Below are positions 34,026 to 34,555 of a stretch of 64,000 nt of DNA, one piece after another; position 1 is the first letter of the stretch, and every line of letters starts with the position of its first letter. A program made the position numbers and the translations under genes. Under the pieces are notes generated by a model. The model did not search any database, had not been told where the DNA came from, and saw only the letters and a list, made by a program, of their open reading frames with translations. This DNA comes from Euprymna scolopes (taxonomy: Eukaryota), in NCBI GenBank assembly GCA_053919585.1, contig CM132786.1; one strand, written 5' to 3'.

Positions 34026-34172
34026 AAACGAATTTCTTAAAGGGGCTGTCATAATTATTTTTTTACTATAATAAATACCTACAGACACTAATGTTTCATC
34101 CTTTCAGGGATCTTCCACTGTGGTAGGTGTCACGATTAACACCAGTCGAAAGATTCGAACTCGGCAACACGA

Positions 34173-34213
<41 letters not shown>

Positions 34214-34238
34214 CATCCCCTTTAAGAAACTCGTTTCT
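34026..34238 (-). mobile_element. tRNA-headed hammerhead element, 5'-truncated copy B with inverted tail duplication
   Basis: Minus strand: GAGTTCGAATC B box...CCTACCACAGTGGAAGA-TCCCTGAAAGGA-T-GAAA-CATTAGTG-TC-TGTAGG...ATGACAGCCCCTTTAAGAAATTCGTTT. The last ~27 bp recur inverted at 34210-34237 beyond a (TA)n. Confidence 0.72.
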
Positions 34239-34380
34239 TATCGTTGAGCACTTTCAGTTGAATTAAGTGGGTCAATTTAGCTCTCATGTATAGACCATCG
34301 TATAACGATTAGATTACTGTCTGACTGACGTAAAGAACATTTAAAATTAAAAAAATGTTTAACTTCAACGTTATTTTACG

Positions 34381-34555
34381 CGGTTAATGGTAACCGAATG
34401 GTTACGATCTTTGCTAATCGAGCCAGAGATGCCTCGTGTTGCAGAGTTCGAATCGTTCGACTGGTATTAATCGTGACACCCTGCACTAGGATTCCCGAAA
34501 GGTTGAAACACTAGTGTCTGCAGGTATTTAATTATTATAGTAAAAAAATGATTAT
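34381..34555 (+). mobile_element. tRNA-Ser(GCU)-like headed hammerhead element, copy C
   Basis: A-box-like TAACCGAATGG, anticodon-loop-like TGCTAATC, long variable region and B box GAGTTCGAATC, then CCTGCA-CTAGGA-TTCCCGAAAGGT-T-GAAA-CACTAGTG-TC-TGCAGG with a perfect stem I. Confidence 0.72.

What the first reader, a model, noticed from the sequence alone, without database searches (positions are those of the whole stretch)
34381..34555. Dispersed family fusing a tRNA-Ser(GCU)-like Pol III head to a dimer-type hammerhead ribozyme (SINE/retrozyme hybrid)
Seen: three homologous ~170-bp copies (2408-2570 +, 34026-34176 -, 34381-34555 +). Each has a tRNA-like region (B box GTTCGAATC in all three; A box in the two full-length copies; TGCTAATC loop in copy C). 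About 20 nt later comes stemI-[CUnAnGA]-stemII(TCC..GGA)-U-GAAA-CACUAGUG-UC-stemI'. Stem I appears to covary (CCTGCA/TGCAGG in C versus CCTAC../TGTAGG in B). Established: minimal type-I hammerheads with a palindromic stem III occur in Penelope-like elements and retrozymes and cleave as dimers, and Schistosoma Sm-alpha is a precedent for a Pol III promoter plus hammerhead. Inference: this is a Pol III-transcribed, self-processing non-autonomous retroelement that may be undescribed in this lineage. Caveat: all three cores are damaged (CTAATGA, CTAGGA, TGGAAGA) and the usual G10.1-C11.1 pair is absent, so activity is only predicted for a consensus or young copy.
Basis: partly seen in the sequence, partly recalled or inferred. 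Interest (0 to 1): 0.8.

Follow-up and report, generated by a model that had tools for sequence, protein, structure and literature searches.

The report
Hammerhead-ribozyme repeat with tRNA-like promoter boxes
The three sequences are decayed copies of a 345-bp non-coding mobile repeat, present more than 12,000 times in this 5.9-Gb mollusc genome, that joins a tRNA-derived promoter-like segment to a hammerhead ribozyme and inserts the way Penelope-like retroelements do; it is a new example of a design already known from blood flukes, not a new kind of element.

Summary
Three homologous copies sit at about the stated places, each with a B box and a type I hammerhead layout, and all three ribozyme cores are damaged.

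The real unit is 345 bp, not about 170 bp. It has a 172-bp leader, a tRNA-Ser(GCU)-like segment with A and B boxes, a hammerhead and an AT-rich tail.

Younger copies elsewhere carry an intact core. 12,004 exact hammerheads are found genome-wide, and 12,527 have the B box a fixed 31 nt upstream.

Insertions end at one fixed 3' point and are 5'-truncated at variable points. They run on as partial tandems (8,319 unit junctions), sometimes have an inverted truncated partner, and lie in (TA)n microsatellites. These are hallmarks of Penelope-like elements.

The ribozyme is the most conserved part across subfamilies. Energy calculations favour a dimeric double hammerhead.

Not supported: stem covariation, tRNA folding (no tRNA model hit), and any direct sign of Pol III transcription, cleavage or circles (only contigs were available).

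Closest known are the Schistosoma Sm-alpha elements and metazoan non-LTR retrozymes. Verdict: real, and a new member of a known kind. The scan had already flagged this family elsewhere in the same genome, and two follow-ups reached the same class.

The parts
34212..34555 (+). Copy C: one full 345-bp unit (unit positions 1-345), 88.8% identical to a young master copy
   Evidence: blastn of the unit from L016; nhmmer E=3e-95
34212..34380 (+). Leader ('region X') of copy C. It is the least conserved part of the family and ends in the unit's only T4 run, just before the tRNA-like segment
34381..34468 (+). tRNA-Ser(GCU)-like segment of copy C: A-box-like TAACCGAATGG at 34391-34401, TTGCTAA loop-like motif at 34411-34417, B-box AGTTCGAATCG at 34445-34455
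   Evidence: Collinear local alignment to the genome's own tRNA-Ser(GCU), positions 5-70; 0 of 300 shuffles reach the score. No tRNA model hit
34480..34524 (+). Dead hammerhead of copy C. Stem I is 34480-34485 paired with 34519-34524. The core is CTAGGA at 34486-34491 (one base missing from CUGANGA). Helix II is 34492-34504 with one mismatch. GAAA is 34505-34508 and the palindrome CACTAGTG is 34509-34516. The would-be cleavage site lies after GTC, between 34518 and 34519
34525..34555 (+). AT-rich tail of copy C, ending at the family's fixed 3' end (...AAAAAAATGATTAT)
34178..34211 (.). (TA)n microsatellite between the inverted copies B and C; this is the family's usual target sequence
34051..34177 (-). 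Copy B: 5'-truncated unit (unit positions 218-345), 83% identical, inverted head-to-head against copy C. It carries a B box and a broken hammerhead (about 34072-34124)
34026..34050 (-). 25-bp extension after the 3' end of copy B that repeats unit positions 1-25 (Penelope-style tail extension or partial next unit)
   Evidence: 100% over 25 bp; compare PMC8557442
2275..2580 (+). Copy A: member of an older subfamily (about 80% identity among its copies), cut at its 5' side by an N-run at 2147-2274. A-box-like at 2417-2427, B box at 2466-2476, hammerhead at 2500-2546 with core CTAATGA at 2506-2512

Best explanation
The three sequences are decayed insertions of a high-copy, non-coding, non-autonomous retroelement of the non-LTR retrozyme / Sm-alpha type.

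The unit is 345 bp and has four parts:
- a variable leader (1-172);
- a degenerate tRNA-Ser(GCU)-derived segment that keeps A and B boxes at class-II tRNA spacing (173-263);
- a canonical metazoan type I hammerhead (269-314, cleavage after GUC at 308);
- an AT-rich tail (315-345).

Shown:
- the anatomy and the copy number;
- conservation of the ribozyme across subfamilies;
- an insertion signature matching the one described for Penelope-like elements: a fixed 3' end, variable 5' truncation that continues into further units, inverted truncated partners, short tail extensions and (TA)n targets.

Inferred mechanism:
1. Tandem copies are transcribed into multimers, most likely from the internal A/B boxes by RNA polymerase III.
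2. Two neighbouring ribozymes pair through the palindromic helix III into a double hammerhead and cut out unit-length RNA.
3. A host ligase may circularise that RNA.
4. Multimeric or circular RNA is copied into (TA)n sites by the reverse transcriptase and GIY-YIG endonuclease of a resident Penelope-like element. Priming on the AU-rich tail sets the fixed 3' end.

The copies in this window are dead.
For: Unit and arrays:
- 345-bp tandem period, 99% matches.
- 8,319 unit-to-unit junctions genome-wide, control 0.

Ribozyme:
- Rfam Hammerhead_1 aligns end to end to young copies (25.6-27.6 bits, E about 1e-3).
- 12,004 exact copies of the 34-nt core-to-cleavage-site string, control 0.
- 25 of 42 sampled copies have an intact core.
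- The hammerhead 3' half is 95-97% conserved between old and young subfamilies, against 15-68% in the leader.
- The exact hammerhead 34-mer is 3.4 times commoner than a leader 34-mer allowed 3 mismatches.

Dimer:
- The cofold energy is -29.4 kcal/mol in a double-hammerhead fold with a 10-bp helix III.
- The monomer MFE is -8.0 and is not a hammerhead fold; the hammerhead fold scores -6.3.

tRNA-like segment:
- It aligns collinearly to the genome's own tRNA-Ser(GCU), z 1.6-5.9. It scores above the Thr and Lys controls in 7 of 8 copies; L018a scores 20 against 21.
- 12,215 copies have an A-box-like motif and an exact B box 36-50 nt apart.
- 12,527 have the B box 31 nt upstream of the core.

Insertion signature:
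- The 3' end is at unit 340-345 in nearly all sampled young-family arrays (exactly 345 in most). 5' ends fall at more than 20 different positions and are followed by full units.
- About 28 of 34 arrays are followed by (AT)n.
- Inverted truncated copies occur in the window and in L018 and L012.
- These match the Penelope hallmarks in PMC8557442.

Helper candidates:
- 15,397 GIY-YIG candidates. Many lie in open frames of 804-870 aa, in tandem or inverted pairs about 2.9 kb apart.

Precedent:
- Sm-alpha is tRNA-derived, appears Pol III-transcribed, and has its promoter in the 3' part of the cleaved monomer, so tandems are needed (PMC2770079, PMC6765202).
Against: - No covariation supports the helices; the support is motif match plus conservation.
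- Scores stay below Rfam's gathering threshold of 34 bits.
- The 10.1-11.1 pair is U.U or A-U rather than G-C, which should weaken catalysis.
- No tRNA model recognises the head, and its acceptor and anticodon stems are not kept.
- The head lies mid-unit, so it is not a classical SINE head.
- T4 terminator depletion on the sense strand is not significant (P about 0.3).
- The predicted 345-nt circle is no more stable than shuffles (z = -0.5).
- RNA data were contigs only. They show the sequence in RNA libraries but not transcription start, cleavage or circles.
- No helper element sharing the tail was retrieved. One GIY-YIG ORF checked on C1 has no exact family hammerhead within 40 kb.
Confidence: 0.55

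Rival explanations
1. Same retrozyme-type element, but the tRNA-like segment is an inert relic or passenger. Transcription comes from read-through or Pol II, as proposed in general for metazoan retrozymes.
For: - The review PMC7761336 states that metazoan retrozymes seem to have no promoters.
- The head is only 47-72% conserved between subfamilies, hardly better than the leader.
- No tRNA fold is kept.
- There is no significant T4 avoidance.
- The family is present in poly(A)-selected libraries.
Against: - A and B boxes at class-II tRNA spacing persist in every subfamily seen and in more than 12,000 copies.
- The B-box decamer differs from the young unit's at about one base in each old copy read by eye in the alignment.
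- Sm-alpha is a precedent for a working Pol III promoter in this position (PMC6765202).
Confidence: 0.35
2. The sequences are not an independent family. They are detached pseudo-LTR pieces of an autonomous Penelope-like element whose own terminal repeat carries the tRNA-like boxes and the hammerhead.
For: - Hammerheads lie in Penelope pseudo-LTRs (PMC4209133).
- Vertebrate retrozymes are related to pLTRs (bioRxiv 10.64898/2026.07.22.740005).
- Abundant GIY-YIG ORFs are present.
Against: - 8,319 junctions join a unit end directly to a unit start with a 345-bp period and no ORF.
- Among the first 100 exact hammerheads listed on C1, none are paired at 2-5 kb.
- Sampled insertions are 172-1,035 bp long and are flanked by (TA)n on both sides.
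Confidence: 0.12
3. It is a classical tRNA-derived SINE mobilised by a LINE, and the hammerhead-like string is a passenger.
For: A/B boxes, high copy number and 5' truncation.
Against: - The head is not at the 5' end.
- There is no poly(A) or LINE-like tail.
- Partial tandems, inverted partners and (TA)n targets are present.
- The hammerhead is the best conserved part.
Confidence: 0.04
4. It is plain satellite DNA spread by DNA-level processes, and the hammerhead resemblance is due to chance.
For: Tandem arrays exist, and no catalysis has been shown.
Against: - Arrays are mostly 1-3 units, on all large contigs, with a fixed 3' end and variable 5' ends.
- All invariant core positions and three helices are present, and this segment is the conserved one.
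Confidence: 0.03

Closest known systems
Schistosoma Sm-alpha / Sj-alpha SINE-like elements
   Same: - A repeat of about 335-345 bp, both dispersed and in tandem.
- A tRNA-derived Pol III-type head on the same strand and upstream of a type I hammerhead. After cleavage the promoter therefore lies in the 3' part of the monomer, and tandems are needed (PMC2770079, PMC6765202).
   Different: - Different phylum.
- The head here resembles tRNA-Ser(GCU) rather than tRNA-Gln(TTG), and it is too degenerate for tRNA finders, whereas Sm-alpha heads are called by tRNAscan-SE.
- The 10.1-11.1 pair here is U.U or A-U.
- Sequence homology was not tested, so independent assembly is inferred, not shown.
- Cleavage and Pol III use are shown for Sm-alpha but not here.
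Metazoan non-LTR retrozymes (coral, mussel, axolotl; Cervera and de la Pena 2020, PMC7229834)
   Same: - A type I hammerhead in AT-rich tandem repeats of 150-450 bp, from dimers upward.
- Thousands of copies and no ORF.
- A weak palindromic helix III.
- A U.U mismatch at the base of helix II, also described for one axolotl ribozyme.
- Proposed mobilisation by Penelope-like elements.
   Different: - Those elements are described as lacking promoters (PMC7761336); this family keeps A and B boxes.
- CircRNA expression is shown there and was untestable here.
- The predicted circle here is not unusually structured.
Penelope-like elements and their pseudo-LTR hammerheads (PMC4209133, PMC8557442)
   Same: Partial tandems, inverted 5'-truncated partner, short tail extension, (TA)n target bias, and a hammerhead near the 3' end that is expected to act as a dimer.
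   Different: - No RT or endonuclease ORF in the unit.
- The ribozyme has the canonical metazoan helix sizes (I 6 bp, II 4 bp, III 3 bp plus a CUAG loop). It does not have the min-HHR form with a long helix II.
Newt satellite 2 and cave-cricket pDo500 hammerhead satellites
   Same: Tandem repeats of about 330 bp whose transcripts are cut by dimer-dependent type I hammerheads.
   Different: According to PMC6765202 those transcripts appear to be made by Pol II, and no tRNA-like module is described. Comparison with pDo500 rests on my own knowledge.

Membership tests
Hammerhead ribozyme, type I (Rfam RF00163) | Invariant core CUGANGA ... GAAA ... UH | tested here: met
   Met in young family members: 12,004 exact copies genome-wide and 25 of 42 sampled. 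Not met in any of the three window copies.
Hammerhead ribozyme, type I (Rfam RF00163) | Three helices in type I order with helix I open | tested here: met
   cmscan aligns model positions 1-45 end to end. Helix cells pair in 89% of copies, against 30-48% in slid registers.
Hammerhead ribozyme, type I (Rfam RF00163) | Score at or above Rfam's gathering threshold (34 bits) | tested here: not met
   20.3-27.6 bits in young and old copies. No hit at all on the window copies.
Hammerhead ribozyme, type I (Rfam RF00163) | G10.1-C11.1 pair at the base of helix II | tested here: not met
   U.U in most copies and A-U in the youngest arrays.
Hammerhead ribozyme, type I (Rfam RF00163) | Covariation in the helices | tested here: not met
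   No excess over shuffles. Power is low because the copies decay neutrally.
Hammerhead ribozyme, type I (Rfam RF00163) | Site-specific self-cleavage | not testable with these tools
   Only contigs of RNA runs were available, so no ends are visible.
Non-LTR retrozyme | Type I hammerhead inside short tandem repeats (150-450 bp) of low GC, without an ORF | tested here: met
   345-bp period; 8,319 junctions; GC 38.8%; no ORF of 130 aa or more near the copies.
Non-LTR retrozyme | Expression as unit-length linear and circular RNA | tested here: inconclusive
   The sequence occurs in poly(A), oligo-dT and ribo-depleted RNA libraries from several studies. The data are fragmentary contigs, and DNA carry-over cannot be excluded.
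Penelope-type insertion (non-autonomous) | Partial tandem with a 5'-truncated upstream copy, and a fixed 3' end | tested here: met
Penelope-type insertion (non-autonomous) | Inverted 5'-truncated copy next to the upstream end; 30-40 bp tail extension | tested here: met
   Window copy B against copy C, with a 25-bp extension at 34026-34050. Also seen in L012 and L018. B and C could equally be two separate events in one microsatellite.
Penelope-type insertion (non-autonomous) | (TA)n microsatellite target bias | tested here: met
   About 28 of 34 arrays are followed by (AT)n, and about 16 are preceded by it.
Penelope-type insertion (non-autonomous) | A resident autonomous element that shares the terminal sequence | tested here: inconclusive
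   Many GIY-YIG ORFs of 804-870 aa are present.
tRNA-derived SINE | A and B boxes at tRNA spacing, and similarity to a specific tRNA | tested here: met
   A box at unit 180-190 and B box at 234-244. The segment aligns collinearly to the genome's own tRNA-Ser(GCU), z up to 5.9. The control panel held only Thr and Lys.
tRNA-derived SINE | Head recognisable as a tRNA or pseudo-tRNA by structure models | tested here: not met
   ARAGORN finds none. There is no RF00005 hit at E<=10.
tRNA-derived SINE | Head at the 5' end of the element; LINE-type tail | tested here: not met
   The head is at 173-263 of 345. 5' ends are scattered, with only 2 of about 31 at position 173. The tail is AT-rich and lies in (TA)n.
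tRNA-derived SINE | Transcription by RNA polymerase III | not testable with these tools
   No raw RNA reads were available. The indirect T4-avoidance test was not significant.

The most novel reading that the evidence does not exclude
The A/B boxes are a working internal Pol III promoter, so this would be a retrozyme that brings its own transcription.
- A tandem of two or more units would make its own multimeric RNA.
- It would cut that RNA as a double hammerhead and hand it to Penelope machinery.
- The design would have been assembled independently of Schistosoma Sm-alpha, from a different tRNA.
- It would be the main 'missing SINE' of a cephalopod-type genome.
Probability: 0.35. Interest if true: 0.6.

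Novelty: new member of a known kind. Interest (0 to 1): 0.42.

Why it matters
- More than 12,000 sequence-intact hammerheads, in short tandems, sit in a mollusc genome of a size and contig count that suggest a decapodiform cephalopod. That makes a large natural system for studying ribozyme-made RNAs.
- The field's reviews say animal retrozymes seem to lack promoters. A family that has kept tRNA-type A and B boxes next to the ribozyme through several subfamily turnovers would give a testable answer to how such elements are transcribed. It would also be a second, probably independent, case of the Sm-alpha design.
- Practically, the family probably sits among the 'unclassified' repeats of such genomes, and it marks (TA)n microsatellites as insertion hot spots.
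- The window copies themselves are inactive relics.

Tried and rejected
- **Covariation of the hammerhead helices:** none beyond shuffles.
- **tRNA models:** Rfam and ARAGORN give no hit on the window or on young and old copies.
- **Cloverleaf-like stems in the head:** 3-bp stems exist by eye across the subfamily variants listed, but in shifting registers. I do not count them as compensatory.
- **Avoidance of T4 terminators on the sense strand:** 1 run observed against 2.1 expected, P about 0.3.
- **Unusual stability of the 345-nt circle:** z = -0.5.
- **RNA evidence:** both run searches returned only Logan contigs. Laying four runs gave fragmentary contigs, no ends and no bridging pieces. The depth profile follows the DNA run, so nothing can be said on expression, cleavage or circles.
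- **Two insertions that start exactly at the predicted Pol III start (unit 173):** their upstream flanks are unrelated, and two coincident 5' ends among about 31 are expected by chance.
- **A broad tRNA control panel:** the RF00005 search returned one tRNA-Thr cluster only. I did not try another tool for that.
- **Ferbeyre 1998 (PMC108972):** not held. Sm-alpha facts are taken from PMC2770079 and PMC6765202.

Full report
**What is in the window**

The window is AT-rich eukaryotic DNA (GC about 33%) from contig C4 of a 5.9-Gb assembly.

A profile built from family members finds exactly these three and no others in the 64 kb.

Copy C has:
- an A-box-like TAACCGAATGG at 34391-34401;
- TTGCTAATC at 34411-34419;
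- a B box at 34445-34455;
- the string stem I / CTAGGA / helix II / GAAA / CACTAGTG / TC / stem I' at 34480-34524.

Copy A has the same layout at 2417-2546. Copy B has it on the minus strand.

Rfam gives no hammerhead or tRNA hit on them even at E<=10, and ARAGORN finds no tRNA.

**The unit is 345 bp, not about 170 bp**

Searching the genome with copy C gave more than 3,000 first-look candidates. The scored hits were 91-95% identical, and several lay 345 bp apart.

Tandem Repeats Finder shows a 345-bp period with 99% matches in L016. Read on the element strand, a unit consists of:
- a 172-bp leader starting GACAGCCCC;
- the tRNA-like segment (A box at unit 180-190, B box at 234-244);
- the hammerhead (269-314);
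- an AT-rich tail ending AAAAAAATAATTAT (345).

Mapped back onto the window:
- Copy C is a complete unit at 34212-34555, 88.8% identical.
- Copy B is unit 218-345 at 34177-34051, followed by 25 bp that repeat unit 1-25 (34050-34026).
- Copy A (2275-2580) belongs to an older subfamily whose members are about 80% alike. An N-run at 2147-2274 cuts its 5' side, and I did not fill it.

**The ribozyme is intact in younger copies and is the conserved heart of the family**

In young copies the sequence reads CCUGCA-CUGAAGA-(A/U)UCC-CGAAA-GGAU-GAAA-CACUAGUG-UC-UGUAGG. Rfam's Hammerhead_1 model aligns to it from position 1 to 45 at 25.6-27.6 bits (E about 1e-3). This is below the gathering score of 34.

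Counts:
- 25 of 42 sampled copies keep every invariant core base, and the other 17 carry damage in or beside the core, mostly at one or two positions.
- The exact 34-nt string from CUGANGA to GUC occurs 12,004 times genome-wide, and the reversed control 0 times.
- A 34-mer of the leader occurs only 3,507 times even with three mismatches allowed.

Between old and young subfamilies the 3' half of the hammerhead is 95-97% identical. The leader is 15-68% identical and the tRNA-like part 47-72%. That pattern is what selection on the ribozyme in the master copies would give.

The helix sizes are I 6 bp, II 4 bp, and III 3 bp closed by the palindromic loop CUAG. They match the 'canonical' metazoan type I hammerhead described in PMC4209133.

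The 10.1-11.1 pair is U.U or A-U rather than G-C. PMC7229834 describes a U.U mismatch at this place for one axolotl retrozyme ribozyme.

**Dimer versus monomer**

| Species | Energy (kcal/mol) | Fold |
|---|---|---|
| 46-nt monomer, minimum free energy | -8.0 | not a hammerhead |
| 46-nt monomer, forced hammerhead fold | -6.3 | hammerhead |
| two copies, cofold | -29.4 | double hammerhead with a 10-bp intermolecular helix III (ACACUAGUGU) |

**Covariation is not there**

On 42 copies (34 distinct) the hammerhead pairs form in 89.2% of cells, against 89.3% in shuffles. No stem I pair changes on both sides. The only recurrent change is G.U to G-C at one stem I pair, in five sequences including copy C.

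This test has little power, because copies decay neutrally after insertion.

**The tRNA-like segment**

The genome's own tRNA-Ser(GCU) was recovered. Hundreds of copies lie in a 213-bp tandem array on C29.

The element's head aligns collinearly with tRNA positions 5-72: A box and D arm, the GCUAAU loop motif, then the B box. Z-scores against dinucleotide shuffles run from 1.6 to 5.9, and 0 of 300 shuffles reach copy C's score. In 7 of 8 copies the score is above the scores against tRNA-Thr and tRNA-Lys; L018a scores 20 against 21.

The 43-nt gap between the A and B boxes fits a class-II tRNA with a long variable arm (my own knowledge of tRNA numbering).

Genome-wide:
- 12,215 sites have TRGCCGNNNGG followed 36-50 nt later by an exact GGTTCGAATC.
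- 12,527 have that B box exactly 20-32 nt (31 in nearly all listed) upstream of CUGANGA-NUCCC on the same strand.

Against a real tRNA-like fold:
- no tRNA model hit in any copy;
- no acceptor stem;
- only short stems, in shifting registers, in the anticodon-like region.

The segment is best described as a decayed tRNA-Ser-related relic that has kept both promoter boxes.

**How it inserts**

In 30 loci fetched around young copies, the element's 3' end falls at unit 340-345 in nearly all arrays of the young family (exactly 345 in most); exceptions are the divergent copies in L018 and L030 and window copies A and B. The 5' end falls at more than 20 different positions: 1, 15, 28, 34, 40, 76, 94, 105, 113, 173, 218, 236, 268, 276, 283, 311-319 and others. 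A truncated first unit is followed directly by one to three complete units.

The end-to-start junction occurs 8,319 times in the genome. About 28 of 34 arrays are followed by (AT)n and about 16 are preceded by it.

Inverted, 5'-truncated copies face full copies in the window (B against C, across 34 bp of (TA)n), in L018 and in L012. Short extensions repeating the unit start follow some 3' ends.

Craig et al. 2021 (PMC8557442) list exactly these features for Penelope-like elements:
- partial tandems forming pseudo-LTRs;
- an adjacent inverted 5'-truncated copy;
- a 30-40 bp tail extension;
- a bias for (TA)n;
- a hammerhead near the 3' end.

The fixed 3' end at 345 is 37 nt downstream of the cleavage site at 308. 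The template's 3' end is therefore not set by the ribozyme. I infer that priming of (TA)n target DNA on the AU-rich tail sets it. The same microhomology would explain the clustering of 5' junctions at unit 1 and at 311-319.

Candidate helpers exist. The Pfam GIY-YIG model gives 15,397 first-look candidates, and 150 of 150 scored hits are above the cut-off. Many are identical in score, lie inside open frames of 804-870 aa, and sit in tandem or inverted pairs about 2.9 kb apart.

The link is therefore circumstantial. The one such ORF on C1 within the listed range has no exact family hammerhead within 40 kb.

**Transcription and processing: inferred only**

Both searches for sequencing runs returned only assembled contigs. 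The family is present in poly(A), oligo-dT and ribo-depleted RNA libraries of several studies. It also appears under other species labels, and in libraries labelled 'mollusc' and 'invertebrate metagenome', which is my basis for calling the host a mollusc.

The laid contigs are short fragments. They show no ends and no piece bridging a junction by 31 nt, and their depth profile mirrors that of the DNA run. Nothing can be concluded about transcription start, cleavage or circles.

Two indirect tests were negative:
- T4 runs are not significantly avoided.
- The 345-nt circle is not more stable than shuffles.

**Comparison with what is known**

*Schistosoma Sm-alpha / Sj-alpha.* This family has the same design. 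It is SINE-like, its head is tRNA-Gln(TTG)-derived, and it carries a hammerhead (PMC2770079). It appears to be Pol III-transcribed. Because the promoter ends up in the 3' part of the cleaved monomer, it needs tandems of at least two units (PMC6765202). Here the promoter-like boxes likewise lie just upstream of the ribozyme, in the 3' half of a monomer cut at 308/309.

*Metazoan non-LTR retrozymes* (PMC7229834). These share the repeat size, low GC, type I ribozyme, copy numbers and suspected Penelope dependence. A 2026 preprint ties vertebrate retrozymes to Penelope pseudo-LTRs (10.64898/2026.07.22.740005). The review PMC7761336 states that such elements seem to have no promoter, so the retained A/B boxes are the one feature that goes beyond the retrozyme description.

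*Cephalopods.* I found only a count of 235 Rfam hammerhead hits in the giant squid genome (PMC6962438). A statement that decapodiform genomes have almost no annotated SINEs appears in PMC13218726. That this genome is a decapodiform cephalopod is my inference from its size and about 46 large contigs; it is not shown.

**Earlier notes of this scan**

First readers had flagged the family many times on other pieces of this genome. Two follow-ups (s1-279839, s1-244824) called related 321-bp and hairpin forms Penelope-dependent retrozyme-type elements with a tRNA-like module of unproven function. My own tests reach the same class independently.

Note s1-275156, on this window, describes the inverted tail duplication that I confirmed. 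Note s1-295599 claims that a GIY-YIG remnant is directly followed by the module. That lead is untested.

**Verdict**

This is a real, very abundant hammerhead-bearing non-autonomous retroelement. The window's three copies are dead.

| Reading | Probability |
|---|---|
| Class (retrozyme / Sm-alpha type with a Penelope-style insertion signature) | about 0.8 |
| The A/B boxes drive Pol III transcription | about 0.4 |
| The whole stated mechanism | about 0.55 |

It is a new member of a known kind, of moderate interest.

Noticed in passing
window 1667-1804 (+): Partial U2 snRNA match just over Rfam's threshold (47.6 against 46 bits). The first 50 nt or so are near-perfect and most of the body is missing. 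It looks like a truncated U2 pseudogene or retrocopy.
   Followed up: no
window 2147-2274: A 128-base N-run directly abuts the 5' side of copy A, so that copy's leader cannot be read.
   Followed up: no
G000 C29:87.57-87.63 Mb (L031-L036 hold single genes elsewhere): A 33-nt stretch of tRNA-Ser(GCU) has 882 matches with up to 2 mismatches. Most of those listed lie in a head-to-tail array with a 213-bp period, and many array members carry point changes, including in the anticodon.
   Followed up: partly
G000 C11:1.68-2.16 Mb (L037-L066): A huge tRNA-Thr cluster. The 30 overlapping 3-kb loci gave 532 ARAGORN calls of tRNA-Thr(UGU). Variants of the same body are read as Thr(AGU), Thr(CGU), Lys(UUU) or Ser(ACU).
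   Followed up: no
G000, e.g. C12:14496712-14504984, C13:17111032-17117229, C5:35826174-35829313: Very many GIY-YIG domains (15,397 candidates) with identical scores lie inside open frames of 804-870 aa, arranged in tandem and inverted pairs about 2.9 kb apart. This looks like a young, possibly active Penelope-like family and a candidate helper for the hammerhead repeat.
   Followed up: partly
L012 580-1676, L013 710-1676, L018 1305-2844: Single microsatellites hold several independent insertions of different age and orientation from this family, so (TA)n tracts act as repeated landing sites.
   Followed up: partly
L030 1027-1255, L018 2845-3073: Apparently strong Rfam E-values for plant microRNA families (MIR7533, MIR2646) fall on dinucleotide microsatellites. 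They are far below the gathering scores and are low-complexity artefacts.
   Followed up: no
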